Below are positions 10,027 through 52,207 of a stretch of 64,000 bases of DNA, piece after piece. Location of the stretch: the IMG/VR virus record IMGVR_UViG_3300050821_002957, positions 248,001 to 312,000 of that record; one strand, written 5' to 3'. Positions within the stretch are counted from its first letter, which is position 1. Every line of letters starts with the position of its first letter. Both the position numbers and the translations under genes were made by a program. A model generated the notes under the pieces. It was not told where the DNA came from, searched no databases, and worked only from the letters and a program-made list of their open reading frames with translations.

Positions 10027-10985
10027 AATCTAATCCTAACAGGTTCGAGGGCGAATGTCAATAGACGTATCTACTTTTTATCACCAATCAGTTCGTCAAT
10101 AATGGCTTCTAGACCGACATGAATAATGGTGAATCCGTCCGCATCATTCATGGTTTTGGGGTAGCTGACATTAAGATCATGGCGGGAATGTTTGAAAATG
10201 TACGTCAACAGTGAGCCGTCCCGTTTGGCGTCCAAATACAGCACTAATCCCATCTCTCCGAAGTGCTTTAAAAACAAGCGCTTGAGATCCTCAGGAAACG
10301 CCAGATCATCGGCCAGCTTTAACTGCTCCAACGTGTAGGCTTTCATACTTCCAATCCTATCAGGTTCAAGGGTTAAAAGTCAACTAGATGTATCAGTTTT
10401 TTCGTACCAATTTGGCGGCATCGGGGTCCAGCTTTTCGTGTCCCGAATGTCGCAAGGCACGTCGGCGTCTTGTGGCCGTAGATGCTTGTGGTATGCGTGT
10501 AGGCGACGTTGAAATTTGGAAGTGCTCAGATAGTCCCCAAGCGTCATCGGTGCGTCTACGTGCGCCGGATTGAGTTCACCGCAGGTTGTACAACGACGCA
10601 GCAGAAAATCGTGATCGCATTCGGTAGTGGCAGACGATGCATTCACAGTAGTGATGTCGTACCGTGTGAATGTTTCATTCGAGTCCCAACAAAGCGTGAG
10701 CGGTTCGATTTCCCTTATTGTTGCGGTGACAAAACGTGTTCCCTTCTCCTTGGACTCGACAAAAATTTTGAAGGATTCTTGCGTCATTAACAGACGTTCA
10801 ATCACATCACGATAGGTCAAATCTTCATCATCTAAAATACGAATTTTCCACTCACCTTCGCCCGGAAGTTCCCATGCGCCAGCAAGACATTCTTTCAATC
10901 CAGGATGAAGCAGTCGTACCCGAAGATTTGGTCGTTCGATTGGATTGAATTTACCGAAGTTAACGATGCTGAATGCCATGACGCT

Positions 10986-39055: not shown

Positions 39056-40612
39056 TTCAGTTCTCGATACGCTCTTCCCAGATTTTCAGCACTTTCATGA
39101 ACTGTTCATCGAGTTCCGGCGACTCTCCAATGGTAATTTTCCGACCCATGAGCTTACTGACTTCGGCGATACTCTGGTCCATTTTTTTGGTCGCACGCAC
39201 AATGTCGAGTTCATGTAGATGATCGAAGTTCTTGGCAGTCTTCCAGATTTCTGCTTCAGCCTTCACGTCTACAATACTACGGTTGATCCAATCGAAGATG
39301 GCCTTGTACTGACGTTTGTTGCTTCGGCGTTGAACTAGCGCCAACAACTTTTCACGATTGGTCTGAAGTTTACACAAAAGGGAGTGGAGTTCGATACGTC
39401 GAGCAGCCTTGTAAATTTGAAATTGCAACCATGTGCTCATTTCACGTCCCATCCTTTCAGGAACAAAGACAAGACTACACGTTCGAGATTTCGTAAGGCT
39501 TCGTTGGAATCGGTAGCAGGCGCAGGATCGAGTTCAATTTTGTCACTGACCACCTGGGGCACATTTGTCGTCGGAACAAATGTTTTGCAACGATTAATTG
39601 GTTGATGCCAGACGTAGGTCTTTCCCGCAATCTCGACGACGAAACGGTAGCACAGGGTATCTGTCTCAAAGACAAGATTGGAGACGAACCCATTATCGTA
39701 CAGATACCAAATGAAATTGGTTTTTAGGTCGTAGGCTTTATTGTTCGTTGCCGCCGTGAATTTTTTCGCCTTGATGTGCTTGTTCAGATCGTAGCACGCC
39801 TCACACCCGGCAGCGACGACATCTTCAAAAAGCATCCCACCGAGCGCCTCAAGTTCTCGTTCCGCCACCTTACGAAGCTCGACAACAAACTCAGGAGATT
39901 GCTTTGCAGTAGCGATAGCACTCTGCGGAAAGAATACTATGCCCGAGGCATCATTACGTTTGACCGGCGCACCCAACAGAGCGATCATGCCTTTGGTCCA
40001 GTTTTTACCCCGAAACGTATTGATATCGAGTGGATCATTAGTGCCGAAGTGATTGACAGACACCAGATAATTCGGAAACCCTTTCATGCCTTTTTCTCCT
40101 CTAAGAATACAGTGTAACCGTATCGGTACATACCAAACAATTGCCCATCTTCATCCGTACCAGTAGAGATCATGTGAAATGCTCTGTCACCCATCACAAT
40201 GATCATCGGGATATGGTCTAGCTCGACGGTACGAACTTCGTCATGCAGCCCATCACGAAGATACAGGCGCATCTGTTTTGGTTTCATGCTTTCACTCCGA
40301 AAATCTTTTTCAAAATCCAGACAGGCGGATGATCCAACCATGCAAGATCATTGGCAAATGGACATTCATCCTGGCGCAAAGAGGACTCATAATACTTGGC
40401 AGCGGCAACCGAAATGCTTGTTGATTCCACCCAACCATCACACTTTGAATACGTCATGTGAATGTATTCTAGAGCTTCTTCAGCGGTGCGGCCTCTGGTG
40501 AGCACCGTGCCAATACGGGAATGTGAGAAGCTCCACAGCAAATACTTCTCACCATTCGGAACGTACCGGAATTCAAGTTCTCGGCACTCTTCTGTTGTAA
40601 GCCACTTCATCA

Positions 40613-41710
40613 TTATTTCACCCCTGCAAATTGTTCGATCATTGCTTGCTGGGAAGGCTGACCGGCCAGCGGATTCGCCGACGAAGGCTTCACACCCTTT
40701 ACCAGCCGCACATTGTGGAACGTCGTCGGATACTGATTGAAGCCTTTTCCGTGGACACTGTAGTTGCAGATCACTTTGTTGCGAACAGTGAAGCTCGATC
40801 CATCGGCGAAGTGAAACACAATCTCGCCCTGAAAGCCTGCGCCATTCACATGACCCTCGATGATTTCGGGAATGACACCGGAACCGAAACCGCTCATGAT
40901 CATCTGATTGTCTTTCGCTTCAAGAACGACGGCCAGCTTGGTGACGTTTTTGTAGAGGAACATACGCTGGGCATAATCGGCGTCCTTCTGAGCGATCTTG
41001 CGGAGCAGATCCTTGAAATTTGGAACGAGGCGAGTATAGTTGCCGGTGTGCGAATCCCATCCTTCGCCTACAGTCTGTAACAAGAAATCGGCAGAGGTCG
41101 GCGTATATCGTTCGTTGCGTGTGCGAGGATGGTCCATGCGATATTGAACCGAAGAGACGAAATTGTTGAACAGGATGTCTTCGTACTGGAGGGTCAGACC
41201 GTCTGTCATGTCCTTCAGAACTTTCGTGACGAGGATTGCCGCTTCGGTGGTCGGCATCGGCGGAACGTAATCGTCGGCCTTCTCTTCTTCGCTGCGCCCG
41301 ACACGCTTCACAATTTTGTCCTTCAGGAGCATCAGCGCATCATACAGGTCAACGATCTCAGCGCAGACGGCGAACCATTGAGCATTGTCAAACTTCTTCT
41401 TTTTGGCGAGCTTCACTTTTCCGGCGACTTGATTGCCGTACATGAAAGTCAGATCGAAGGTATAGTTCTCGACCTTGGGAAAATGATAGGCAGCGCTAAA
41501 GGCTTCGCTGTACAGTCCACGATGGCTGTCCTCTGCGATACTGACGACGGTATTGAGTGCTTCTTTGGCGCTCTTGAATTCAGGATTGGGGATCGAATCG
41601 GTGTAGGTGTTCAGAGCATTGACGACCGTCTGGAGGGCTTTCTTGCCCCAAGACGATTGATTCGCTTGGCAGGCGGCGTTCAACAGCGGGTATTGATCTA
41701 CGCTCTTCAT
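40613..41710 (-). CDS. Early hypothetical phage protein
   Basis: 365-aa ORF with its own leaderless promoter and palindrome; no function recognised. Confidence 0.6.
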   Translation of the reverse strand: MKSVDQYPLLNAACQANQSSWGKKALQTVVNALNTYTDSIPNPEFKSAKEALNTVVSIAEDSHRGLYSEAFSAAYHFPKVENYTFDLTFMYGNQVAGKVKLAKKKKFDNAQWFAVCAEIVDLYDALMLLKDKIVKRVGRSEEEKADDYVPPMPTTEAAILVTKVLKDMTDGLTLQYEDILFNNFVSSVQYRMDHPRTRNERYTPTSADFLLQTVGEGWDSHTGNYTRLVPNFKDLLRKIAQKDADYAQRMFLYKNVTKLAVVLEAKDNQMIMSGFGSGVIPEIIEGHVNGAGFQGEIVFHFADGSSFTVRNKVICNYSVHGKGFNQYPTTFHNVRLVKGVKPSSANPLAGQPSQQAMIEQFAGVK

Positions 41711-41876
41711 GAAACTAGAATAGCAAACCTACCCTACCATGTCAACAGTAGATGCATCTTTTTCTGGAAGGAATATTTTATCTACCTCTTGACATATTGA
41801 CGGCTGGTGCGCTATGCTGGTACTGTCAAAGAGAGTCCCATTTTCAACGACTTACGTCCGTTGATAAATACTCTCC

Positions 41877-42281
41877 ATGAAAACCTTCCTCGAATTTATC
41901 TTGACCGAGAATGCCATGTTACCGGGCGTTGCTGGCGTAATGAAACACCAACGGGACAATGGTTTAGCCAAGGTAGGTGTTCATCCCAATTTTGCTGCCA
42001 TTAAGAAGCAGCGTGAAGATAGCATCAACAAAGTTGGCACCCATCCAAATTTTGCTGAAATCTTACGTCGGCGTCAAGCAGGTCAAATGTCGGAAGAAGA
42101 AATGAACGAACTGCTTGGTCTATTCAAAAAGAAAAACGATGCAAAACCCTCGCCGTTTGCCAAACCAAAAAACGCAATTGGACATGGTGACAAGGCTTAT
42201 CGCACGAACCACCATTATGGGAACGGTGACATCGAACCATCCACCGTTCCTATTTTCAAACCAACTTGGCAGAATCGTTAG
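41877..42281 (+). CDS. Probable internal head protein
   Basis: N-term MKTFLEFILTE resembles the T4 capsid targeting sequence MKTYQEFIAE; TAAATA promoter; internal repeat KVG.HPNFA.I. Confidence 0.65.
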   Translation: MKTFLEFILTENAMLPGVAGVMKHQRDNGLAKVGVHPNFAAIKKQREDSINKVGTHPNFAEILRRRQAGQMSEEEMNELLGLFKKKNDAKPSPFAKPKNAIGHGDKAYRTNHHYGNGDIEPSTVPIFKPTWQNR

Positions 42282-42865
42282 AAACGTCTCGGACACGCTG
42301 GCGGCTTCGCACAATCACCGGGTCCACCATTGTCCTTGGTCACTTTTTTGTTGGGAACTTTCTTCGGCTTTTTGACCGGCGACAATTGATGTGCATCGAA
42401 GTATTGAACGTCAGTCAAAATGCCTTCATGCAGTTTTGATGATTGCAGACCGACTCGCTGTGACGACGTAAAAAATTTGGACAATGAAATCGCAACACCT
42501 TCAAAATCTGAAATGCTGTCTTTGTACGTGTCGCCGAGTACGATCATATCCGGCTCTTCTTCATATGAAATCACTGCGGCCCCAGGTTGTTCTTGGAGAA
42601 GCTGTTCGTCAATGTAGAATCCGTCCATCGGCCCACCGTCAGCCTTGAGACCCGGAGGCTGAATTGCCACTCGGACGCACGCATACAGGAAAGTTGTGCG
42701 AGAGACAGCGACACCTTTAAGTCCTGAAATGGGATCTTTGTATGTTCTGCCGAGCGTTGCTACTTCTGTCGCTGCGGTCTTCAAAACGTTTTCACGATCA
42801 ATTGGTTTGGAGTTTGCCATGTGTCGAGAGTAACATGATGGCTATAGGTGTGTCAATAATTTTAA

Positions 42866-42953
42866 TGGCTGGAGGAGCAGGACTCGAACCTGCATATGAG
42901 CTTTCGCTACGACACATTAACAGTGTGCTGCCTTACCGTTAGGCGACCCTCCA
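42866..42953 (-). tRNA. tRNA with GTT (Asn) anticodon on a class II long-variable-arm body
   Basis: TGGAGGG/TCCTCCA acceptor, G73-CCA, loop CTGTTAA, 18-nt variable region with AGC-GAAA-GCT hairpin. Confidence 0.88.
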
Positions 42954-42967
42954 ATATAAATGGATGT

Positions 42968-43408
42968 ATGGCAAATTCACAGAAAGTAAAAGAATGGCGC
43001 AAAAGAACCAAACAACGAATGATTGATGCAATGGGTGGATCGTGTGTAGTCTGTGGCTACACTCGTTGTTCAGCCTCATTAGGATTTCATCATCTCGATC
43101 CGAGCAAGAAACATTTTGGTTTCGGAGGTCTTCGTGCCAACCCAAAATCTTGGGAGAAGATCAGCGAAGAACTACGAAAATGCGTTCTGATTTGCAATCG
43201 TTGTCACGGAGAAGTACATGATGGTATAACCATCATTCCCATTAATGCAAAACGGTACGACGAAAGTTATGCTCAGAAATTTGGAAGAAGAAAAATGGCT
43301 CCGGGGACAGGACTCGAACCTGTAACATCCGCTTTAACAGAGCGGCGCTCTACCATTGAGCTACCCCGGAATGAGGTTGCTTCTTTGGTTAGGGTCACGC
43401 CGTTTTAA
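42968..43408 (+). mobile_element. HNH endonuclease between two tRNA-Asn genes
   Basis: CVVCGY..C..SLGFHHLDP..K...E..KCVLICNRCHGEVH. Confidence 0.85.
43296..43370 (-). tRNA. tRNA-Asn(GTT), canonical
   Basis: TCCGGGG/CCCCGGA, CCGCT-CTGTTAA-AGCGG, GCCA end. Confidence 0.95.
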
Positions 43409-43711
43409 AGCGTGACCTACGTATTGTAGGTTGTGTAAGTCATCACAATTCTATTTATACCACGGTGTTTTGAAACTGTCAACCTTTTATTTTACATTGA
43501 CTCCGATCATTCGTCATACCGATCCATGAATTCTCTAACGTCATCAATACGAATTACAAACAAAATGATGAACAGAGGACCGCCGATGCAAAATAACACT
43601 CTGGCAGTTTGCTCCATGTCCATTATCATCTCAAAGAACCCCGCAAGAAAAAGCAAAATGAATGCCAGCCGCCAGCAATTCTTCCAGTTGATCTTCACAT
43701 AATCGAACATG

Positions 43712-44647
43712 TTACACCACCAAATCTTTGGGCAAGCGTTCAGTCCGTGCAATCTCTTCTGCGGTCGGTTTGATCACATTGCCGACGATTCCACCGAAGA
43801 TTGCTCCGACCGTATCTGTGTCGCCACCGACCTCAATGAAGCTGTTGATGCAGGATGCGAACGAAAGACCTTTTTCCAAAGCCTGATGTGCCTGCCATAA
43901 TGCAAAAGGAACTGTATCGACTGCCGTTACTTCTTTGCCGTTTCCAACCTTGCCAATTATTCCCCAATTGGTTTCGTTAAATGCACCCTCACTGGCGACC
44001 CATTCGATGCGATCACGAAGTTCCCCTGATGGTGTGTATTTGATGATGTTTAACCAGAAGTCTTCCTCAGGTCTTCCATAAGTTACGTTTGCTGCGGCTA
44101 TGGCGACCGCTATCGAACCGGCAATAGCATCGACGTGATAATGGGTCACTTCGGCAGATAGACGTGCTTCTTGCGCTACAAGGCCATAGTCAGGTCCAAA
44201 GTGTGCGCCAATGACAGCATCACGCATTGCCGATCCGTTGCCTTTTGAGCCGATGCCCGGTCCCCACCAATTCTTGCTATGCTCAAGCCAATTGTCGGAG
44301 TCATAGCTATAGGTCGTCAACAAACCACGAGTGCCACGCCCATAACCACGCTGAGGATCAACATGAAAATTACGAGCTAATTCCTGAGCGAGTTCGAGTT
44401 GATTGATCGTATTGAATCGGTACAAAGTTCTAACGACACCAATACCGACATGTGTGTCGTCTGTCCAGGGATAGAGAATGTCAATTTTTGTGATCCCTCG
44501 TTCAGTGGCGACATTCCCAGCCTTGTAATATTCAGCCGGAAGAATCTTCATCTGATTTTCGCCTGCTGCATCGCCTACCGACAAGGCAAGAAGCGAAAGA
44601 TAAGTTTCTTTCTTTTTGTACTGCATCGGAGCAAGACAGGGTGTCAT
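43712..44647 (-). CDS. ADP-ribosylglycohydrolase family protein
   Basis: VGDAAG, WTDDT, RGYG, GNGSAMR, VTH, GGDTDT. Confidence 0.92.
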   Translation of the reverse strand: MTPCLAPMQYKKKETYLSLLALSVGDAAGENQMKILPAEYYKAGNVATERGITKIDILYPWTDDTHVGIGVVRTLYRFNTINQLELAQELARNFHVDPQRGYGRGTRGLLTTYSYDSDNWLEHSKNWWGPGIGSKGNGSAMRDAVIGAHFGPDYGLVAQEARLSAEVTHYHVDAIAGSIAVAIAAANVTYGRPEEDFWLNIIKYTPSGELRDRIEWVASEGAFNETNWGIIGKVGNGKEVTAVDTVPFALWQAHQALEKGLSFASCINSFIEVGGDTDTVGAIFGGIVGNVIKPTAEEIARTERLPKDLVV

Positions 44648-45292
44648 ATTTCACCTACTTGGTCGGTTTGTGCCAACCATATGCATGTTGAGCGGTCTTT
44701 GGCTCATATCCTAGAACGAGGTTACAGTTGGCAATACATTCGTCAAGATGACCGTCGCCTTTGTGAGTTGGATCTTGCAAAAATTGAAGTGCATGACGAA
44801 TTGCTTGGCGTGCAGATCGAGCTTCGTTTTGCAGACGTTGAATTTGTTCTTCTATAGTTTCTACCATGTCTTAGTGTTTGTCCTCCACCACCCAAACAGA
44901 TAGCATACCACGGCGTAGATAATTGTCCATTCACCAGCAGTGAGAAAGAATGTGCCGCATCCTATCGTAGGAGTATCGAATGACAAGTTTGCAAAGAAGG
45001 CTTTTCCAAGACAAACAGCGAGACCGCCAAAATAAACAGCGGCAAAGAAGAGTTCACTTGGTCGAGGTACGGTGATATTGGGCCACTTCATATCCACAAT
45101 GTTCGCACCGATCACCAGGGAAGTCAAGTTTTGCGCCTTGATGTAGATGAGCTTCTTGATTTGGATTGTCGGGCGTGCAGATAGTTTCAATGCCGGTAAA
45201 CTTTGTGTTTGGATCGAAACTGAAATTTGGATCTAATTTGTAAATCATAGCAAGAAGTATATAGCACTTCTAAGCCAATGAAATTAAGGTTT

Positions 45293-45366
45293 TGGCAGGA
45301 GTGGTAGGAGTTGAACCCACGCTAAAGGTTTTGGAGGCCCTTGTGCTACCGTTACACCACACTCCT
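45293..45366 (-). tRNA. tRNA-Trp(CCA)
   Basis: AGGAGTG/CACTCCT acceptor, loop CTCCAAA, GCCA end. Confidence 0.92.
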
Positions 45367-45382
45367 GTGATGAGGAAGATTA

Positions 45383-45458
45383 TGGCCGCTGGTTCCAGTT
45401 ACGCTCTGGACTCTTCTGTTCTTCAGACAGACGCTTTCACTAGATTAGCTTACCAGCG
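45383..45458 (-). tRNA. tRNA-Phe(GAA), atypical T-loop AGCGTAA and D-loop AG
   Basis: CGCTGGT/ACCAGCG acceptor, TCTGT-CTGAAGA-ACAGA anticodon arm, TCCAG/CTGGA T stem, GCCA end. Confidence 0.85.
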
Positions 45459-45476
45459 GTGTTGTGCTTTGAGAGA

Positions 45477-45515
45477 GGCGCAACGACTGCTGGTTTCAAC
45501 AGCAGTCGTTGCGCC
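45477..45515 (-). other. Perfect 16-bp hairpin with 7-nt UUGAAAC loop, 5' of tRNA-Phe
   Basis: GGCGCAACGACTGCTG inverted repeat. Confidence 0.8.
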
Positions 45516-45605
45516 CCGGTGGTAAATCGCCAATATGTAAAAGTGCGTGTCATCGTAATTCTATTTATACCACGATCATTGCTGTCTGTCAACAATGAAA
45601 TTCTG

Positions 45606-45684
45606 TGTCGTGAACAAATGGTTCCTCGGATGGGAGCGGTATCATAGGCAGTGATAATCCCACCTGATTCCCCGGCTCACGACA
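45606..45684 (-). ncRNA. Y-RNA-like RNA 1 (bulged-C terminal helix)
   Basis: UGUCGUGAGC-C-GGG...GGGAUUAUC...AUUUGUUCACGACA. Confidence 0.7.
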
Positions 45685-45990
45685 AAATAACAAGGCCACT
45701 CGGAAGTAGCCAAGATCCCTTGGTACACATGGTAACAGGGTCTACTATTCGTGAATGATTTCGCCTATCACTCGTTCTGGCATTAGCTTCTCAGGCGGGA
45801 CACTTCCATTCATAAGGTCAACCATGCGCTGTGCTTGAGCTAGAGTGTGAAAGGTTCCATACGGTGTGACATGTGCTCCACCGTCGCCAGAACCTACTTC
45901 AACCAAATCATACTTCGTTTCCGTCTTCGGCCAAATCTCGTACCTAATTTTCTGTTCGGTCGATGACTTGTTGACGAATTCCATAAATGT

Positions 45991-46521
45991 GTGTCGGTGT
46001 TAAGGCACACCGAGCAGGCCGCAAGATTTTGTTACTGATCAATACCTGCTAAGAACCAGGATGTTTAAGAACTTATCCTTGAGAAAGCTCCGTTGTAGGC
46101 GACACGGCTTCCCTGAGAGTCAGAGTTACTTCAGCTACTCCTGATGGTATGGTGACTCAGCTACCCCGACTTTTTAGTGATCGGCTCCATTCCGGTATTC
46201 GATTCGGCAACGACAGATTCCGACTCTGCAACGTTCTGCTTCTTTTCGATGAGAAGCAAAAATCATAAAAACTCAAAATGACCAGAGGACCCTCAGCAGT
46301 GAGCGCAGATCCCACGTTCGCATACAAGCGTCAATGACAAGTTTTATCCAACGAGCCATTGTCTTGTACGTTGGCTCACCGTCGAGTGCGCTATCCAGTT
46401 CGACACACTCACCTGCGGTTCTAATGACTTTCGTCTCCCGCTGGCCCTATCATCGCCTCACACTTCCGTGTGTTTCAACATCCTGGTCATCTCAAGGGCG
46501 ACAGCCTTGCGGCCACGACAC
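45991..46521 (-). ncRNA. Large pseudoknotted ncRNA, ROOL-like (~530 nt)
   Basis: Long-range pairs 45991-96:46516-21, 46017-25:46506-14, 46055-65:46477-87 and 46077-84:46490-97 (last two cross); lies in a tRNA cluster; family name is an inference. Confidence 0.65.
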
Positions 46522-46768
46522 CCCACCAGCTTTTTTACTGTGTACTGATCACAGGGAGAGCTAGAACGACTTTCGCCGCCCCACACCTACCGCCACTGGT
46601 CGAGACTTCTACATGCGACCAGCCATGTCGCTAAAAGGGGCACTACGAGTAGATGCCCTCCACCACGTTGTTCTTTTACGTCCAACAACGAAACGACTTA
46701 GACCCATAACTCTGACCGGAAATCAGAACTATGATCCACACTCCCCGGTGGAAGCCGGGAAGACTTTG

Positions 46769-46855
46769 AATGTGAACTAATAATTGACAAGGGATTATAG
46801 CCCCGAAGGACCATTTCACCATTTGAAAGATAACCCTCATCTTCCGGCTCACATC
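46769..46855 (-). ncRNA. Y-RNA-like RNA 2
   Basis: GAUGUGAGC-C-GGAAGAUGAGGGUUAUCUUUC...AUUAGUUCACAUU. Confidence 0.68.
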
Positions 46856-46864
46856 ACGAAATAC

Positions 46865-46963
46865 GGCTGCTTGTCCTACCATTAGACGACCGGATCTGCC
46901 GACGCTTTACGCCATGAGAGCAGATTGGACTCCGACCGGGACTCGAACCCGGATTTCTCAGCT
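46865..46963 (-). ncRNA. Circularly permuted tRNA-like module (YrlA-type T-acceptor-D order) 1
   Basis: CCGGG-UUCGAGU-CCCGG, then UCGGAGUCCA, linker hairpin, UCCGG-UC-GUCUAAUGGUAGGAC; closed by GCUG/CAGC. Confidence 0.8.
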
Positions 46964-46971
46964 AGACGAAT

Positions 46972-46996
46972 GACGGAGCATAGTGCGCTCTACGTC
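46972..46996 (-). repeat. Conserved bulged hairpin, copy 1 of 3 (others 58131..58157, 58628..58654)
   Basis: (GA)ACG-UM-GAGCG-CASUR-UGCUC-CGU. Confidence 0.8.
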
Positions 46997-47001
46997 GGAA
47001 T

Positions 47002-47078
47002 TGGTGGATACACATGGGAATTGAACCCATAACCTTCTCGGTGCAAGCGAGTTGCTCTCCCAATTGAGCTAGTGACCC
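47002..47078 (-). tRNA. tRNA-Ala(TGC) with a 1-nt bulge in the acceptor stem
   Basis: GGGTCAC / GTG-T-ATCC, G3.U70, loop CTTGCAC, ACCA. Confidence 0.9.
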
Positions 47079-47085
47079 ATAACTT

Positions 47086-47162
47086 TGTACCTCGAACAAA
47101 TAAGTATCAGAGGGCTTGTCATTAGGAAAGATAACCCTCTAAATCCGGCTCGAAGCACTACA
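47086..47162 (-). ncRNA. Y-RNA-like RNA 3
   Basis: GCUUCGAGC-C-GGAUUUAGAGGGUUAUCUUUC...AUUUGUUCGAGGU. Confidence 0.72.
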
Positions 47163-47169
47163 AAACTTT

Positions 47170-47248
47170 TGGTGGATCGCCAGGGATTTGAACCCTGCTG
47201 TTATCCTCGGTGCAAGCGAGGCAAACACCCCAAGCATTTCCGCAACCC
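47170..47248 (-). tRNA. tRNA-Ala(TGC), non-canonical 6-bp D stem
   Basis: GGGTTGC/GCGATCC with G3.U70; AAATGC-TTGGG-GTGTTT D arm; CCTCG-CTTGCAC-CGAGG. Confidence 0.85.
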
Positions 47249-47256
47249 ACATTTAA

Positions 47257-47466
47257 ATAGCACGAACAAATAGCGGTAGAAGACTGATAGGAGACTGCAT
47301 TTAACGCACCCTCGGATTGGATACCGATCAGATACGCTTCAAACTCCCCTCCTCAAAGTTACGGGCGTCTTTTACTACACGTACAACGAACTGCTTTGTG
47401 CCCACCAAATACTGCCGGTGAACTTTGTCATGGTTAGGTAACCTTCCAACCAGCGGCTCGTGCTAT
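47257..47466 (-). ncRNA. Y-RNA-like RNA 4 (long internal domain)
   Basis: AUAGCACGAGC-C-GC...GAAGGUUACC...AUUUGUUCGUGCUAU. Confidence 0.7.
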
Positions 47467-47468
47467 GT

Positions 47469-47530
47469 CGAAACAGAACGAAACAGAACGAAACAGAACG
47501 AAACAGTGCTCAACGATGCGAAACAGTGCG
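47469..47530. repeat. 10-bp tandem repeat CGAAACAGAA x3 plus two CGAAACAGTG variants
   Basis: Read directly from sequence. Confidence 0.9.
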
Positions 47531-48220
47531 TTAGGTCAAAGATCGTATTCTTTATCTATACACGCTACAGTTTGCTTTCAATAGCGCCTTTGACTCTTTC
47601 AGTCTAACATCCTTAGTATGGGATGTCAAGTGCCACGAACATAATAATTTCATCTTCGTCTTTTTTGCGACGAGCAGCAGCTTCTTTCTCAGTCAACACC
47701 AGAGGAGACGGATTGCCTTCGACTTTGATATTCACTGATAAACCTTGCTGGAGCCATCCAGATACTTCATCGGGCGGCGTCTCGACAAATGCCTGATCAC
47801 ACGCCTTCTGAATTTCGACATTGCGTATTGCAGCAAGCGGTTTGCCGGATGGCGTCATGATGTCTACGTTACAAAGAAGCATGTTTATCTACCAACTGCT
47901 ACGGCTGAAATTCCGATAACACTTTCAATATTGTACAACAGACGAGCGGCTTCTGACAATTCTGAGCCGGTGCGATCCAGTGTAGCATGGACGCCGGTCG
48001 GATCAGAATCAGCTTTTGAGTCATCGTCTTCTCCGGTGTATTGAAGAACATCTAACACCGTTTTTAAGCGACGAGCCAACATCCTAGCCAATTGCAAATT
48101 TGCATCCGAAGAAGATTGAATTGTCGTTGGTTCGTGGTTCTTTTCTGCTGGACCGTCAACAACTAATCCAAACTTCTCTAATAAAACTTTGTTTCCTTTC
48201 TTTCCTGTATTCATAATTTT

Positions 48221-48296
48221 TGGTTGGCCCAGATGGAATCGAACCATCAACCTCAGAATTATCAGTTCTGCGCTCTACCAATTGAGCTATGGGCCA
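48221..48296 (-). tRNA. tRNA-Ile(GAT)
   Basis: TGGCCCA/TGGGCCA, CAGAA-CTGATAA-TTCTG, ACCA. Confidence 0.95.
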
Positions 48297-48381
48297 ACAT
48301 ACTCAGAAGTAGTTATACTAGCGGCGAATCATTAGTGGAGGCCCAATAATCCGCCGCCAGTTTTACAGAATCAACCAAAAA

Positions 48382-50175
48382 CTACTCTTCGGTCTCTTCT
48401 GCGATCCCAGCACTTGAACCACGAATAAAATCCGTAACCAATGCTGGAACATTCGAGTCGAACCCAACGATGTCCAAAGAATACGGGTCCTTCGGATCTG
48501 CGATGGTAAATTGCGTAGAAACCATTCCCATCACGATCAGGCGCACATCATCCTGCCCACGATGCTTACGATACTGCTTGAGAGCCTGCGACGGTTGCAT
48601 TTGTCCAGCCCAAGTCTCATTATCCGTGATCACCATGAAAGCGTCTGCGTCGATGCCAGCCTTTTGAGCGTGAAGCATCGGTGCAGCACAATCGGTTCCA
48701 CCAGCCGACATGCGAGAGGTCTTTGCCAACGCAGTCTTCAGAGTGTCCTTTGCGGTGATGCCAATTTCCTGCATTCCCGTAGAAAATGCATAGATAGCGT
48801 AATTCGGTTCCGTGCGAGCCACAACCATCGCCATTGCTGCGCCTGCTTGTGCTGCCGTGATTCCGGTGCCTTGGATGATGCTGGACGCCCACGACATAGA
48901 ACCAGAAACGTCCATGCCAATGTACGTAGCCTTACCAGTCGGAATTGCGTTTGCGAATGCCAAGTAGAACGTGTTCTCTAAAGCGTCCACAATGGTCGGT
49001 ACAACGGTCCAGGTCGCATCGCTGCGCTGACCGTGGCCTTGGCCGTAGGTGCCTTGTGCCAACAATACCTGGAGCGGGTGAATCTTGCTCTTCTTGACGT
49101 AGGCTTCATCGTTCAAACGAGACACGACGAGCTTCGATGCTGCCGACAGCGGCTTCAAGAGACCAATCTTCGACATGGTTCCAAGATTACGAACCATTGC
49201 AGTTACCGGCATCTTCTGAAGCAGAGCTTCCCAGACTTCCGGTTGCGTCTTAAACTGCGTCGGAATCATTTCGTGAGTCAATCCACCGTCGATGATGCAC
49301 TTTACGATAGTGCTCGTATCCGTCGCCTTCTTTGCGGTTTCATAGGCGGTGATCAACTTCGGTGCGTTCGATCCGGTCAACAAATCATAAGCGTTCTGAT
49401 AGCGAGCACGCTGATTCTGAATTTCCGCAGAAGTCAGATCAGTCGTGCGATGGCTGTTGCCCTGCCACTTCTTGACAGAACGAGTCCAGTTCTGAGCAGC
49501 TTCGTTCAAGGCATCGAGACCACCGAAACGACCCCAAGCCAGCAAAGCACTCTTCATCGGATCAGTCGCCTTGACGTGTGCGAGGCTGACGAGATCACGA
49601 GTGGACCAGCCATCACGCTGTTGATACTTCGCCAACTGATAAGCCAGCGAATCTTCCGTGCGTTCGGTGTACCAGTTGCCGATTGCAGTCTTTACACCAC
49701 GACCGTATCCACGCATGGAATCGAGGTACTCGTTGAAGTGGAACATGTGAGTACCGATACGTGCAACCTTGCTCAATTGCGACAGAGCATAAGCAGCAGT
49801 TTCAGCCGAACCAAAATTCGGTGTTGCGGCAACTGCCAGGGCAAACAATGCCGGATCGTTCTTCGGAGCACGGCCTGCTTGCGAAATGTTGACGATCATA
49901 TCGACCGTGCGCTTTCCATCCAACTGCAAGCACGCACGAACGTTCGCTGCGTTGTCTACAGTCATCTTCTTGGCAGATGCATAGTACGTCGGCGCATCGC
50001 TACCGAGAATCAAAAATCGTTCGAGCATCTGGAAGGGAGTGATGGTGAAGGTGTATCCACCAGCGTTGTTCTGCTTCATCTCTGCTTCCCGGCCCGGAAT
50101 TGCCTGCGACTGTGATGTCTTCTTGCCGCTTAATACCGTTGCGTAATTGCTCTTTGCTGATCCTGCCTTTGCCAT
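48382..50175 (-). CDS. rsr: Ro60/Rsr TROVE-domain RNA-binding protein
   Basis: NNAGGY, RFLILGS, GRAPKNDPALFALA, KYQQRDGWS, RNLG.M, IHP, vWA DVSGSM, TDNETW, GFD; AGGAGA SD before ATG 50175. Confidence 0.95.
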   Translation of the reverse strand: MAKAGSAKSNYATVLSGKKTSQSQAIPGREAEMKQNNAGGYTFTITPFQMLERFLILGSDAPTYYASAKKMTVDNAANVRACLQLDGKRTVDMIVNISQAGRAPKNDPALFALAVAATPNFGSAETAAYALSQLSKVARIGTHMFHFNEYLDSMRGYGRGVKTAIGNWYTERTEDSLAYQLAKYQQRDGWSTRDLVSLAHVKATDPMKSALLAWGRFGGLDALNEAAQNWTRSVKKWQGNSHRTTDLTSAEIQNQRARYQNAYDLLTGSNAPKLITAYETAKKATDTSTIVKCIIDGGLTHEMIPTQFKTQPEVWEALLQKMPVTAMVRNLGTMSKIGLLKPLSAASKLVVSRLNDEAYVKKSKIHPLQVLLAQGTYGQGHGQRSDATWTVVPTIVDALENTFYLAFANAIPTGKATYIGMDVSGSMSWASSIIQGTGITAAQAGAAMAMVVARTEPNYAIYAFSTGMQEIGITAKDTLKTALAKTSRMSAGGTDCAAPMLHAQKAGIDADAFMVITDNETWAGQMQPSQALKQYRKHRGQDDVRLIVMGMVSTQFTIADPKDPYSLDIVGFDSNVPALVTDFIRGSSAGIAEETEE

Positions 50176-50250
50176 ATCATTATCTCCTATGATACCTAAT
50201 TTTTTCGACTTCACCAGAATAACACATGCCTGATTGTTGTCAAGCATGTA

Positions 50251-50589
50251 TTATCCAATATCACCTGCTCCATCTTTGTGACGTAAGATCACTTCTTCAG
50301 CGATCATGTACGCCAAGACTGCAAGCTGTTCGTAATACTTCATGGTCATATCGATGATTTCGTCGATCTGACTACGTGTTGCGATGATACGAACCGGAAT
50401 CATTCGTTCCTCAAACAGCGTCTCTTTAAAAATCCACTGTCCTTTCGCAACCGGCATGATCGTCAAACCACCAGAAATTGTACGCACCTTTTCATCCCAG
50501 ATTTTGTGGAATCTGGTTCTGATCGGACGACCGTCATTCCGCATTGTCGGAACGAGAATCTCCCACATCGATTTTTTGGTGCTATTCAC
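50251..50589 (-). CDS. Hypothetical phage protein upstream of rsr
   Basis: WEILVPT..GGLTI...KGQW..ERMIPVRI; leaderless promoter with palindrome. Confidence 0.6.
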   Translation of the reverse strand: MNSTKKSMWEILVPTMRNDGRPIRTRFHKIWDEKVRTISGGLTIMPVAKGQWIFKETLFEERMIPVRIIATRSQIDEIIDMTMKYYEQLAVLAYMIAEEVILRHKDGAGDIG

Positions 50590-51097
50590 ACACCCACCAT
50601 AACATGTAGATGTGTCTTTGTCAAACTACCAATTCAAATTGTTCGAGGTCCCCGGTCACATAGCTGCCCGTTTCAAGTTGAGCCGTCCAGTGATCAGGAT
50701 GAAGTACGTATGATTCGGAAGTTGGATTCCAAATTTTATACCGCTCAGTTACCACGCCTGCGATTATATAGGCACACTGAAAATTACAGCCAGGACAACG
50801 TTCGGTTTTGGTTCCATCCCAGCCGCCATGATAGAGGATCTTGACGCCGGGTTTCATTTGGTCGAGGATCATGAAATACTCACACTATCGGCTAACACCA
50901 TCAATTCTCATGAGTTTGCCTCTTAATGTCCGGTGCTATCAGTTCTATGAGCTTGTCCAGTTGAGGCCGAATGGTGTCTAGGTCAACTTTCGTGTAACCC
51001 TTTTGCATCATTGCGTCTACCATTTCATATGCCGTAGTTGTGATCTCGTACAATTCTTCTGTCAGATCGCTTTGGTAGACGTACTCGCCCCAATCTC

Positions 51098-52207
51098 TCA
51101 TCTGATTTCCCCACCAATCTCTGCAACCAGTTTACGAATTGCATCGCCCTCAGGACCGGCCCAACGGCGCTTCAGGTCTTCGTCAACATCTTTGGACTTA
51201 TTACGCCAGTCGTCAATCGCTAATTTTTGTTTTTTAAGAAACGGATTGCCCTTTTTGATTTGTTCCGAAAGACCATCCCAGTCAATCAGGCCACCGCCGT
51301 TGATGTCAAAACTTACTTCAATTGCAATTTTGAAGCGACCATCGGTGTCATCAAGGTATTCTGTGTCGATAGCATCTTTTAGAGATAAGTGTGTCGGAAG
51401 AGAAATGTATCCAAACCGTTCTTCACGAACAATGATGCCTTCGTCAATTCGACTAATATTGAAATACTGGATTTTCCAGCTTGTATCGTCGCCCCAATAA
51501 CAACCAGCGACAAATGCGTGCTTCGGAGGAAGAATTACACTCCCATAAGCATAGTCTTTTTTTGGTCCCCAGACCCATCGATATTCATCACGTTCGTATG
51601 AAGTTCCAGCGTCGTTTATTTTGCCGGTGTACGCCCGGACTCTGGTTCCGTCTTCGTAATAGATGATTTTCCGACCAGACATTTTTGAACTAATGTCACC
51701 GATACGAGCACCTGGAGGAAATTTTTCGAGTAAGTTCTTCCAATCATTCTCCGAATAATCGTCTTCGCTAACATGCTGCCGAATCGTAGGAATGTACAAC
51801 TCGACTGGACAAAACCCATCACTGTCTTTTTCTTCCCCGCCGATGTCTTTGATGCCGACACCAGGAGTGATTTCTAAGACACGAGTGCCGGTATAGTGTG
51901 GAGAGTAGAGAGCATAATACTTGTCGCCTTTCCGAGTGACCGCAAAGGTTTCAGAGAAAGCATGATAGTTGCGTATGTACTCACCGATCAGATAAGGATC
52001 TTGTCCTTGTGCGTCCTGTTGAAAGACCCCGATCTTCTGATAAGACCAACAGCCTTTACCTTTGTCGATTTGGTCGATTACTTTAGCCGTAAAGGATGGA
52101 TATTCTTTTAAATACCCATCCTCATCTTGCGGAGCCACAGGCGTAGGAATCTGAACGGTGACCGAAGGGATCACCGTGTTCGATTTTCTATTGAAAGACC
52201 AGAACAT
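51098..52207 (-). CDS. Hypothetical protein
   Basis: 369-aa ORF directly downstream of clpP. Confidence 0.6.
   Translation of the reverse strand: MFWSFNRKSNTVIPSVTVQIPTPVAPQDEDGYLKEYPSFTAKVIDQIDKGKGCWSYQKIGVFQQDAQGQDPYLIGEYIRNYHAFSETFAVTRKGDKYYALYSPHYTGTRVLEITPGVGIKDIGGEEKDSDGFCPVELYIPTIRQHVSEDDYSENDWKNLLEKFPPGARIGDISSKMSGRKIIYYEDGTRVRAYTGKINDAGTSYERDEYRWVWGPKKDYAYGSVILPPKHAFVAGCYWGDDTSWKIQYFNISRIDEGIIVREERFGYISLPTHLSLKDAIDTEYLDDTDGRFKIAIEVSFDINGGGLIDWDGLSEQIKKGNPFLKKQKLAIDDWRNKSKDVDEDLKRRWAGPEGDAIRKLVAEIGGEIR

What the first reader, a model, noticed from the sequence alone, without database searches (positions are those of the whole stretch)
45991..46521. ~530-nt RNA with crossing long-range helices (ROOL-like) inside the Ro/Y cluster
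Four perfect long-range complementarities (6, 9, 11 and 8 bp) join the two ends, and two of them cross to form a pseudoknot. Size and phage tRNA-cluster context fit ROOL RNAs, whose function is unknown and which are mostly reported from Firmicutes and Fusobacteria. A copy between Y-like RNAs in a probable Acidobacteria phage would extend the range and hint at a link with Ro.
Basis: partly seen in the sequence, partly recalled or inferred. Interest (0 to 1): 0.78.

Follow-up and report, generated by a model that had tools for sequence, protein, structure and literature searches.

The report
Abundant large phage RNA, not ROOL
A soil jumbo phage makes large amounts of a roughly 770-base non-coding RNA next to its Ro60, Y-like RNA and tRNA genes; the RNA is real and structured, is not a ROOL or GOLLD RNA, and its centre belongs to an undescribed RNA family that also occurs in unrelated phages and bacteria.

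Summary
The four complementarities exist and exceed chance: three long-range perfect runs of 8 bp or more against 0.58 in shuffles. The RNA model built on them mostly fails.

- **Transcript.** Soil metatranscriptomes hold a minus-strand RNA covering about 46021-46788. Its depth is 224, against 0-6 for the Ro60 gene and other flanking stretches.
- **Helices in the closest relative (L280, Ro60 77% identical).** Helices 1, 2 and 4 lose pairs and none shows a compensatory change. A 14-bp helix, 46483-46496 with 46272-46285, is fully kept with three compensatory changes.
- **Known families.** Rfam 15 gives no ROOL, GOLLD, Y RNA or other hit, even at E up to 10.
- **Core.** The domain 46273-46486 matches a covariance model built only from unrelated viral and bacterial contigs (57.5 bits, E about 1e-11). 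I call this uncatalogued family F. It has two invariant motifs and a covarying closing helix.
- **Link to Ro.** F was not found in 155 other Ro60 loci, so the Ro association is local to this phage clade.

Function is unknown. I favour a stable trans-acting scaffold or decoy RNA that is processed out of the tRNA and Y-like RNA precursor.

The parts
46021..46788 (-). Abundant transcript as seen in soil metatranscriptomes. The 3' end is at 46021; the 5' end is not sharp and lies between 46742 and 46788.
   Evidence: run X2 contig 46021-46742 at depth 223.7 with Illumina adapter abutting 46021; X6 contig 46283-46788 at depth 24.9; X4 and X5 give partial contigs. The Ro60 gene and other flanking stretches have depth 0-6; 8 RNA runs hold 11-94% of its sampled words.
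46560..46788 (-). 5' leader of local hairpins. It is partly conserved and is also kept in relatives that lack the core.
   Evidence: leader matches L282 9924-10082 (E 3.5e-14), L280 and L288; the MFE fold is made of local hairpins.
46524..46550 (-). Hairpin with an A-rich 13-nt loop (ACACAGUAAAAAA). It is shared by both subgroups of relatives and is present in three tandem copies in L085.
   Evidence: Alignments; repeat family D3 in L085. In this report's reading of the alignment (not a computed pair count), the L280 stem differs on both sides at two positions and stays paired (AUCAG/CUGGU against CCGACG/CGUCGG).
46496..46523 (-). Extended hairpin capped by a GNRA tetraloop (GCAA).
   Evidence: the loop is GCAA here and GAAA in L280 with the stem kept. 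Pairing probability 0.75-0.97.
46483..46496 (-). 5' strand of closing helix P1. It pairs with 46272-46285.
   Evidence: 14 of 14 pairs in both the window and L280, with 3 compensatory and 1 one-sided change and none broken. p 0.84 in L280.
46273..46486 (-). Core domain, a member of the uncatalogued structured-RNA family F.
   Evidence: model R1, built without the window or L280, scores 57.5 bits, E 9.3e-12, over its full length 1-206. L280 scores 58.4 bits; single copy in the 405-kb phage genome.
46456..46467 (-). Invariant family-F motif GGAAGUGUGAGG. In this phage it is partly sequestered in a CACAC-GGAA-GUGUG hairpin.
   Evidence: GGAAGUGUGAG is invariant in the 9 family sequences of the model alignment and the motif is present in the window and L280. 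The minimal member L295 has GGAAGUGUGUGAGG, and L296 lacks the motif.
46285..46314 (-). Hairpin with a covarying stem and an invariant 16-nt loop, UGCGCUCACUGCUGAG. The shared 19-mer is at 46290-46308.
   Evidence: identical 19-mer in viral contigs and bacterial genomes; 2 compensatory stem changes against L280; stem covariation across the family.
46272..46285 (-). 3' strand of closing helix P1.
46021..46271 (-). 3' arm of hairpins.
   Evidence: the motif occurs 2-4 times only in family members; the arm is conserved in L280 (E 1.7e-14), L286 and L085.
45994..46013 (-). Conserved hairpin just beyond the mapped 3' end. It may be a processing or termination signal.
   Evidence: one compensatory change in L280 (U-A to A-U).: -11.4 kcal/mol, z-score -1.77, so not unusually stable for its composition.
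48382..50247 (-). Context: Ro60 ortholog.
   Evidence: vWA_Ro60 2.2e-57, TROVE 2.9e-40; phrog_850.
46769..46855 (-). Context: Y-RNA-like hairpin immediately upstream of the transcript. Two more lie at 47087-47158 and 45606-45684.
   Evidence: long terminal stems. The hairpin at 47087-47158 has a single unpaired C in GAGC[C]GG (z-score -4.83). Shared 5' strand, (repeat families D2, D9). No Rfam Y_RNA hit.

Best explanation
**Shown.**
- The locus encodes a stable, highly abundant non-coding RNA of about 770 nt on the minus strand.
- It lies in the same direction as, and between, tRNA genes and Y-like hairpins downstream of the phage Ro60 gene.
- It is modular. It has a hairpin leader, then a GNRA-capped hairpin. 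The centre is a domain of about 215 nt closed by a 14-bp helix. The tail is a 3' arm of repeated hairpins.
- The central domain belongs to an undescribed structured-RNA family (F). F occurs sporadically in phage and prophage-like DNA and in bacterial genomes of several phyla, often right next to tRNA genes. It has two invariant single-stranded motifs.

**Inferred.**
- The RNA is co-transcribed with the tRNAs and Y-like RNAs and is released by the tRNA-processing machinery, with a discrete 3' end at 46021.
- It acts in trans as a folded scaffold or decoy. Its invariant motifs would contact a partner conserved across hosts, such as a component of the translation or RNA-processing apparatus. The phage-specific arms would adapt it to this phage's RNA repair and quality-control island.

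**My probabilities.**
- Real, stable, structured non-coding RNA with an F-type core: about 0.85.
- Trans-acting scaffold or decoy as the mode of action: about 0.35.
For: **Expression.**
- 8 soil metatranscriptome runs hold the sequence.
- Contig depth is 224 across 46021-46742, against 0-6 on the Ro60 gene and other flanking stretches. Uniform DNA carry-over is therefore excluded.

**Strand.**
- All neighbouring genes and tRNAs are on the minus strand.
- The minus strand folds better than shuffles (z -2.45), while the plus strand does not (z -1.04).
- GNRA loops and G-U pairs only make sense on the minus strand.
- The adapter orientation fits a minus-strand 3' end if the library is dUTP-stranded. 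That last point is an inference.

**Conservation and structure.**
- Homologs sit at the same syntenic place in L280, L085, L286, L284 and L289.
- The window/L280 consensus fold is -109.6 kcal/mol, against -49.9 +/- 5.6 for column shuffles. It has 26 compensatory pairs, against 14.1 +/- 3.6.
- P1 and the loop hairpin covary.

**Family F.**
- 25 of 33 predicted pairs show compensatory changes across 9 sequences.
- The independent model hits the window at E about 1e-11.
- It gives no hit at E up to 1 in 1.39 Mb of other Ro60 loci.
- F sits 5 nt upstream of tRNA-Leu in L300 and close to tRNA-Pro in L304.

**Not coding.**
- The small ORFs have no homologs in L082, L084 or L085.
- 1-nt indels against L280 break the only conserved frame.
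Against: - No experiment or partner is known, so the scaffold or decoy mode is inference only.
- The element is dispensable in close relatives. L282 lacks the core, and L082 keeps only a 122-nt piece.
- The second subgroup of relatives (L085, L286, L284, L289) shares the leader hairpin and the 3' arm, but its core does not match the F model. The unit under selection is therefore not clear.
- Transcript ends come from assembled contigs rather than reads. The 5' end is fuzzy and strandedness is not directly observed.
- Only two sequences support most helices outside the core.
Confidence: 0.6

Rival explanations
1. It is a functional analogue of ROOL and GOLLD: a large phage RNA from a tRNA island that assembles by itself into a multimeric RNA-only particle. 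The strong complementarities between the P1 5' strand region (46477-46497) and the 3' arm (46055-46084) would be intermolecular or alternative contacts.
For: - Size and context match what is described for ROOL and GOLLD: phages and prophages, near tRNAs (PMC5737381; 10.1101/2024.12.08.627333).
- The 11-bp and 8-bp complementarities exceed chance.
- They cannot both form in cis with P1, because all three use the same 5' strand.
- GNRA loops are available for tertiary contacts.
Against: - No ROOL or GOLLD model hit, so there is no homology.
- The two complementarities are weakened in L280 without compensation, and their probability there is about 0.
- Nothing here tests multimerisation.
Confidence: 0.15
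2. It is a Ro60 client or an oversized Y RNA. It would bind the phage Ro60, either as a tether or scaffold or as a decoy substrate, together with the three small Y-like hairpins.
For: - It lies 1.6 kb downstream of Ro60 on the same strand and starts next to a Y-like hairpin.
- This position is kept in at least six related phages.
- Y RNAs are typically encoded within 4 kb of Ro60 on the same strand (PMC4201824).
Against: - No Y_RNA or related Rfam hit.
- The two GNCGAAN(0-1)G matches that I read by eye in the RNA are not conserved in L280 (alignment; not searched with a tool).
- The F core was not found in 155 other Ro60 loci, and other F members had no Ro60 in the flanks fetched.
- L282 keeps Ro60 and the Y-like hairpin but lacks the core.
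Confidence: 0.12
3. It is a processing by-product: a long structured spacer of the tRNA and Y-like RNA precursor that merely survives degradation and has no function of its own.
For: - It sits between RNA genes that are processed.
- It is variable and sometimes absent in relatives.
- A second abundant but unstructured RNA lies in another spacer at 47285-47586.
Against: - The core is a member of a family conserved with invariant motifs and covariation in unrelated genomes.
- The consensus structure is far better than in shuffles.
- Depth is far above the neighbouring mRNAs.
Confidence: 0.08
4. It is a catalytic or self-processing RNA, such as an intron-like element or a ribozyme. The invariant motifs would form an active site through the possible GUGAG/CUCAC pairing.
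For: - Two invariant motifs are held together by a covarying helix, as in many ribozymes.
- The family lies next to tRNA genes and integrases.
- The mapped 3' end is discrete.
Against: - No match to any Rfam ribozyme or intron family.
- No joints or spliced forms appear in the contigs.
- The GUGAG/CUCAC pairing has no covariation because both sides are invariant.
Confidence: 0.05

Closest known systems
ROOL RNA (Rfam family; Weinberg et al. 2017, PMC5737381)
   Same: - A large non-coding RNA (ROOL averages 581 nt).
- Found in phages and prophages, often next to tRNA genes.
- Function unknown.
   Different: - No covariance-model match even at E up to 10.
- Different motifs and a different architecture: leader, closed core of about 215 nt, then a hairpin arm.
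- The host environment is soil jumbo phages.
GOLLD RNA (Rfam family)
   Same: - A large phage RNA near tRNA islands, sometimes covalently linked to tRNAs.
- It has a conserved part and a more variable part.
   Different: - No model match.
- In this RNA the conserved part is central, not at the 3' end.
Bacterial and phage Y RNAs (YrlA, Yrn1; Chen et al. 2014, PMC4201824)
   Same: - Encoded within 4 kb of Ro60 on the same strand.
- The neighbouring small hairpins carry a GGUCCGA-like 5' strand with a bulged C.
   Different: - The large RNA is 5-7 times longer.
- It has no Y RNA model hit.
- Its core family is not otherwise linked to Ro60.
Family F (this report; no published name found; absent from Rfam 15)
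   Same: - The central domain shares GGAAGUGUGAGG, the invariant hairpin loop UGCGCUCACUGCUGAG and a closing helix directly 3' of that hairpin.
- It is tRNA-adjacent.
- Model R1 gives E about 1e-11.
   Different: - In the phage the domain is embedded in a transcript of about 770 nt with extra arms.
- The closing helix is displaced about 15 nt upstream of the first motif, and that motif can form a local GGAA hairpin.
- Other members are 85-215 nt and stand alone.
Stable RNAs of the phage T4 tRNA cluster (species 1 and 2 RNAs; from my own knowledge, not checked here)
   Same: - Phage tRNA clusters can encode additional stable RNAs of unknown function.
- These are processed with the tRNAs.
   Different: - The T4 RNAs are much smaller.
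- No sequence comparison was made.

Membership tests
ROOL | Match to the Rfam ROOL covariance model | tested here: not met
   cmscan of Rfam 15 with permissive filters: no hit at E up to 10 in 41000-50000, none at gathering score in the whole window, and none at E up to 1 in L280, L085, L286 or L284.
ROOL | [quoted passage not shown] | tested here: inconclusive
Only a partial comparative structure was obtained. No conserved pseudoknot was demonstrated.
ROOL | Located in phages or prophages, often near tRNA genes | tested here: met
   405-kb phage record. tRNA-Ala, Ile and Trp genes lie within 2.3 kb on the same strand.
ROOL | Self-assembly into a homo-oligomeric nanocage | not testable with these tools
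   Needs native gels or cryo-EM (10.1101/2024.12.08.627333).
GOLLD | Match to the Rfam GOLLD covariance model | tested here: not met
   Same searches as for ROOL.
Y RNA / YrlA | Match to the Rfam Y RNA models | tested here: not met
   No hit at E up to 10.
Y RNA / YrlA | Conserved GNCGAAN(0-1)G motif near the 5' end (PMC4201824) | tested here: not met
   By eye, two matches in the RNA (GGCGAAAG near 46570-46577 and GACGAAAG near 46429-46436). About 0.4 would be expected by chance, and neither is conserved in L280 (alignment). No pattern search was run.
Y RNA / YrlA | Encoded within 4 kb of Ro60 on the same strand | tested here: met
   Ro60 is at 48382-50247 (-) and the RNA at 46021-46788 (-).
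Y RNA / YrlA | Binds Ro60 | not testable with these tools
   Needs co-immunoprecipitation or a gel shift.
Family F (uncatalogued) | Match to a covariance model built from other members only | tested here: met
   R1, built from 9 sequences excluding the window and L280: 57.5 bits, E 9.3e-12, full length. Chance 19-mer matches score only 22-26 bits. No hit at E up to 1 in 1.39 Mb of control loci.
Family F (uncatalogued) | Invariant motifs GGAAGUGUGAGG and UGCGCUCACUGCUGAG in that order, 130-155 nt apart | tested here: met
   46456-46467 and 46290-46308 on the minus strand.
Family F (uncatalogued) | Covarying closing helix whose 3' strand directly follows the loop hairpin | tested here: met
   P1's 3' strand, 46272-46285, abuts the hairpin at 46285-46314. 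There are 3 compensatory changes against L280. The 5' strand lies about 15 nt further from the first motif than in other members.

The most novel reading that the evidence does not exclude
The RNA is the first characterised member of a new class of large phage RNAs. The class would be built around a mobile, cross-phylum RNA module (family F), whose invariant loops target a universally conserved host machine. In this jumbo-phage clade the module has been recruited into a Ro60, Y RNA and tRNA repair island, where it would work with the Ro60 particle.
Probability: 0.2. Interest if true: 0.9.

Novelty: new variant of a known kind. Interest (0 to 1): 0.72.

Why it matters
Large structured RNAs of unknown function are rare in bacteria and phages. 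The known ones (ROOL, GOLLD, OLE, raiA) have each turned out to be structurally remarkable.

This locus offers several things:
- A new large RNA that is demonstrably abundant in natural soil communities. It comes from a 405-kb phage and sits inside a conserved island with Macro-domain, ClpP, Ro60, eIF-1A-like and ADP-ribosylglycohydrolase genes.
- A core that defines a previously uncatalogued RNA family. The family has invariant motifs across Acidobacteriota, Chloroflexota, Proteobacteria and phages, and it can now be searched for and tested.
- A concrete candidate for asking what phage Ro60 particles and tRNA-island RNAs do during infection.

Tried and rejected
- **Known RNA families.** Rfam at gathering and permissive thresholds on the window, four homolog loci and thirteen family-F loci found only tRNAs and sub-threshold noise.
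- **Cultured phages.** blastn of the region matched only through the tRNA-Ala gene. The F element gave no match in cultured phages or plasmids.
- **80 IMG/VR Ro60 loci** (Ro60 at most 46% identical). nhmmer found only tRNA similarity.
- **The 16-mer GTAAAAAAGCTGGTGG** in IMG/VR gave more than 119 hits. None was a homolog.
- **The 17-mer CACACGGAAGTGTGAGG** in IMG/VR gave no hit.
- **A gapped two-motif pattern** in IMG/VR found only four contigs that were already known.
- **A conserved neighbouring protein for family F.** None recurs across F loci. Pfam on flanking ORFs gave only integrases, an HNH endonuclease and unrelated genes.
- **Protein-coding reading.** The small ORFs at 46157-46327, 46458-46586 and 46676-46882 (-) have no homologs in L082, L084 or L085. 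The plus-strand ORF at 46334-46564 is "conserved" in L280 only through nucleotide identity and is broken by 1-nt indels.
- **The repeated AGCYGA..CAC hairpins as Ro-binding sites or tRNA D-arm relics.** I considered both by eye and found no support.
- **Family F as RNase P RNA, tmRNA or a group I intron.** I considered these because of GAAAGUCCGG-like strings, tRNA adjacency and integrases. I rejected them because no Rfam or ARAGORN hit was found and the motif order does not fit.
- **Distribution of F.** Sampling 151 Acidobacteriota genomes with R1 found only the seed genome.
- **Two relatives' contigs** (P0004, P0021) had no DNA available.

Full report
**Setting**

The window is bases 248001-312000 of a 405,631-bp IMG/VR phage record that is estimated to be complete. 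Around the finding, everything is on the minus strand:
- A Ro60 ortholog at 48382-50247 (Pfam vWA_Ro60 2.2e-57, TROVE 2.9e-40).
- tRNA-Ile, two tRNA-Ala genes, a tRNA-like element and tRNA-Trp.
- An ADP-ribosylglycohydrolase at 43712-44647.

Between tRNA-Ala (47006-47078) and a 79-codon ORF (45745-45984) lies about 1 kb without a credible gene.

**The observation**

- All four complementarities exist, and helices 2 and 3 cross.
- In 300 dinucleotide shuffles of 45991-46521, long-range perfect runs of 8 bp or more average 0.58 against 3 observed (p about 0.01). An 11-bp run occurs in 1% of shuffles.
- The minus strand folds better than shuffles (-189.5 kcal/mol, z -2.45). The plus strand does not (z -1.04).

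So the raw observation is correct and is not chance-like.

**Is there a transcript?**

- Eight soil metatranscriptome runs hold 11-94% of the sampled words of 45985-46600.
- I laid four of them on 44500-50300.
  - Run X2 has one 745-nt contig at depth 223.7 covering 46021-46742. Its end at 46021 runs straight into Illumina adapter.
  - X6 has a contig covering 46283-46788 at depth 24.9.
  - X4 and X5 have partial contigs.
- The Ro60 gene and other flanking stretches in the same runs have depth 0-6. This is an abundant RNA, not DNA carry-over.
- The RNA is therefore about 770 nt (46021 to about 46788).
The 3' arm of helix 4 (45989-45996) lies outside the RNA.
- Loose ends at 46455 and 46628 in X2 match the L280-type sequence. 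A second variant of the RNA is therefore expressed in the same soil.

**Known families**

Rfam 15 gives only tRNAs at gathering score. With permissive filters and E up to 10 it gives nothing in 45985-47005. The same holds for four homologous loci.

**Relatives**

- Ro60 loci in IMG/VR are at most 46% identical and carry no detectable homolog.
- Metagenome contigs and a protein search gave closer phages with Ro60 57-77% identical. Their contigs share a conserved island: Macro, ClpP, Ro60, a gene-free stretch of 1.4-2.5 kb with tRNAs, an eIF-1A-like gene and ADP-ribosylglycohydrolase.
- nhmmer finds the RNA at the same place in several of them:
  - L280: full length, E 1e-31.
  - L085, L286, L284 and L289: a second subgroup.
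- The element is modular and dispensable.
  - L282 (Ro60 76%) keeps only the Y-like hairpin and the leader, followed by tRNA-Phe.
  - L082 is 93% identical to L085 in the flanks but keeps only three short pieces.

**Testing the helices**

I compared the window with L280 (72% identity).

| Helix | Pairs in window | Pairs in L280 | Compensatory changes |
|---|---|---|---|
| P1, 46483-46496 with 46272-46285 | 14/14 | 14/14 | 3 |

- Helix 1's 5' arm is the top of a local hairpin with a GNRA loop, GCAA here and GAAA in L280.
- Energy alone prefers helix 2 in the window (p 0.97; forcing P1 costs 3.5 kcal/mol). It prefers P1 in L280 (p 0.84; helix 2 about 0).
- The whole window/L280 consensus fold is -109.6 kcal/mol, against -49.9 +/- 5.6 for column-shuffled alignments. 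It has 26 compensatory pairs, against 14.1 +/- 3.6.

The RNA is structurally conserved, but not in the way proposed. Helix 2 may be a lineage-specific alternative or an intermolecular contact. I cannot exclude that.

**The core belongs to a wider family**

- A 19-mer conserved between the window and L280 (CTGCGCTCACTGCTGAGGG, 46290-46308) is also found exactly in seven IMG/VR contigs and eleven bacterial genome contigs.
- Six of the viral contigs and six of the bacterial ones share three further features:
  - GGAAGTGTGAGG about 130-155 nt upstream in most of them. L295 is a minimal 85-nt form, and L296 lacks this motif.
  - A covarying stem around the 19-mer.
  - A covarying closing helix.
- RNAalifold on nine of them predicts 33 pairs, 25 with compensatory changes. 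No frame is open through them and no Rfam family matches.
- A covariance model built from these nine sequences, without the window or L280 (R1), behaves as follows:
  - Window 46273-46486: 57.5 bits, E 9.3e-12, full length.
  - L280: 58.4 bits.
  - Chance 19-mer matches: 22-26 bits.
- Nothing is found in 155 other Ro60 loci, 1.39 Mb in total.
- The family (F) is single-copy and sporadic: 1 of 151 Acidobacteriota genomes, which was the seed genome.
- It is absent from cultured phages and plasmids at blastn sensitivity.
- It has no recurrent protein neighbour.
- It often lies next to tRNA genes or integrases.
- The second subgroup of relatives (L085 and others) shares the A-rich-loop hairpin and the 3' hairpin arm but not an F-type core.

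**Anatomy (minus strand, 5' to 3')**

| Coordinates | Part |
|---|---|
| 46560-46788 | Leader of local hairpins |
| 46524-46550 | Hairpin with A-rich loop |
| 46496-46523 | GNRA-capped hairpin |
| 46483-46496 | P1, 5' strand |
| 46273-46486 | F core |
| 46456-46467 | GGAAGUGUGAGG, inside the core |
| 46285-46314 | Invariant-loop hairpin, inside the core |
| 46272-46285 | P1, 3' strand |
| 46021-46271 | 3' arm with three AGCYGA..CAC hairpins |
| 46021 | Mapped 3' end |
| 45994-46013 | Conserved hairpin beyond the 3' end |

**How it probably works**

- *Shown:* the RNA is abundant, non-coding and structurally conserved. It lies in a run of same-strand tRNA and Y-like RNA genes, and its core is an independently conserved RNA module.
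- *Inferred:* it is co-transcribed with the tRNAs and released with them. F members in bacteria abut tRNA 5' ends, which would let RNase P define their 3' end.
- *Proposed:* it acts in trans as a folded scaffold or decoy. The invariance of two loops across phyla argues for a partner conserved across hosts.
- Membership in ROOL, GOLLD and Y RNA fails. A ROOL-like way of working (self-assembly) or Ro60 binding remains possible and untested.

**Limits**

- Transcript ends and strand come from assembled contigs.
- Most helices outside the core rest on two sequences.
- The E-values of R1 are rough because calibration was short.
- The host is unknown.

Noticed in passing
window 47285-47586 (-): A second abundant RNA in the same metatranscriptomes (X2 depth 90, adapter abutting 47285, 36 nt upstream of tRNA-Ala). 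It contains a 10-nt tandem repeat, CUGUUUCGUU, 4-5 times at 47459-47526. It is not unusually stable (z +0.49). Its 3' half is conserved in L280 9485-9690.
   Followed up: partly
window 47087-47158, 46769-46855, 45606-45684 (-): Three hairpins with a shared 5' strand (GAGCCGG...GGGUUAUC). The first has a single bulged C, like the Ro-binding stem of Y RNAs. Rfam has no Y_RNA hit. The first gets a sub-threshold hit to the nematode sRNA family ceN72-3 (34.6 bits), and so does a stretch of L280 at 10048-10115, which I take to be its counterpart without having checked.
   Followed up: partly
L292-L297 (IMG/VR); L299, L300, L302, L304, L306, L307 (bacterial genome contigs): An uncatalogued structured-RNA family (F), 85-215 nt long, with invariant GGAAGUGUGAGG and UGCGCUCACUGCUGAG and a covarying closing helix. 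It occurs in Dehalococcoidia, Acidobacteriota, Hyphomicrobiales and Woeseiaceae genomes and in viral contigs. It is adjacent to tRNA-Leu (L300), tRNA-Pro (L304) and integrases (L292, L307).
   Followed up: partly
window about 46925-46990 (-): By eye, a tRNA-like fragment with a T arm (CCGGG-UUCGAGU-CCCGG) and flanking complementary CUCCG/CGGAG. ARAGORN and Rfam do not call it. It lies between tRNA-Ala and the second Y-like hairpin and may be the tRNA-like module of a YrlA-type RNA.
   Followed up: no
L280, L282, L284, L286, L287, L288, L289, L290 and window 40000-52000: A conserved gene island in related jumbo phages: Macro domain, ClpP protease, Ro60, a tRNA-rich gene-free stretch, an eIF-1A/S1-like protein and ADP-ribosylglycohydrolase. 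This suggests an RNA-repair or anti-ADP-ribosylation module.
   Followed up: no
L082 4300-4570 against L085 2417-3668: Two contigs that are 93% identical in their flanks differ by patchy loss of the RNA region. L082 keeps only 66-122-nt pieces at 97-100% identity. This is either real deletions between repeats or an assembly collapse.
   Followed up: no
window 42866-42953 (-) and 45386-45458 (-): The tRNA with anticodon GTT at 42866-42953 has a 15-nt insert before the T arm. The element at 45386-45458 scores as tRNA in Rfam (39.7 bits) but ARAGORN does not call it.
   Followed up: no
window 46455-46628, run X2: A second contig, 95-99% identical over this stretch, diverges on both sides. Its divergent flank reads like the L280 version of the RNA, so a related phage's RNA is expressed in the same sample.
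   Followed up: partly
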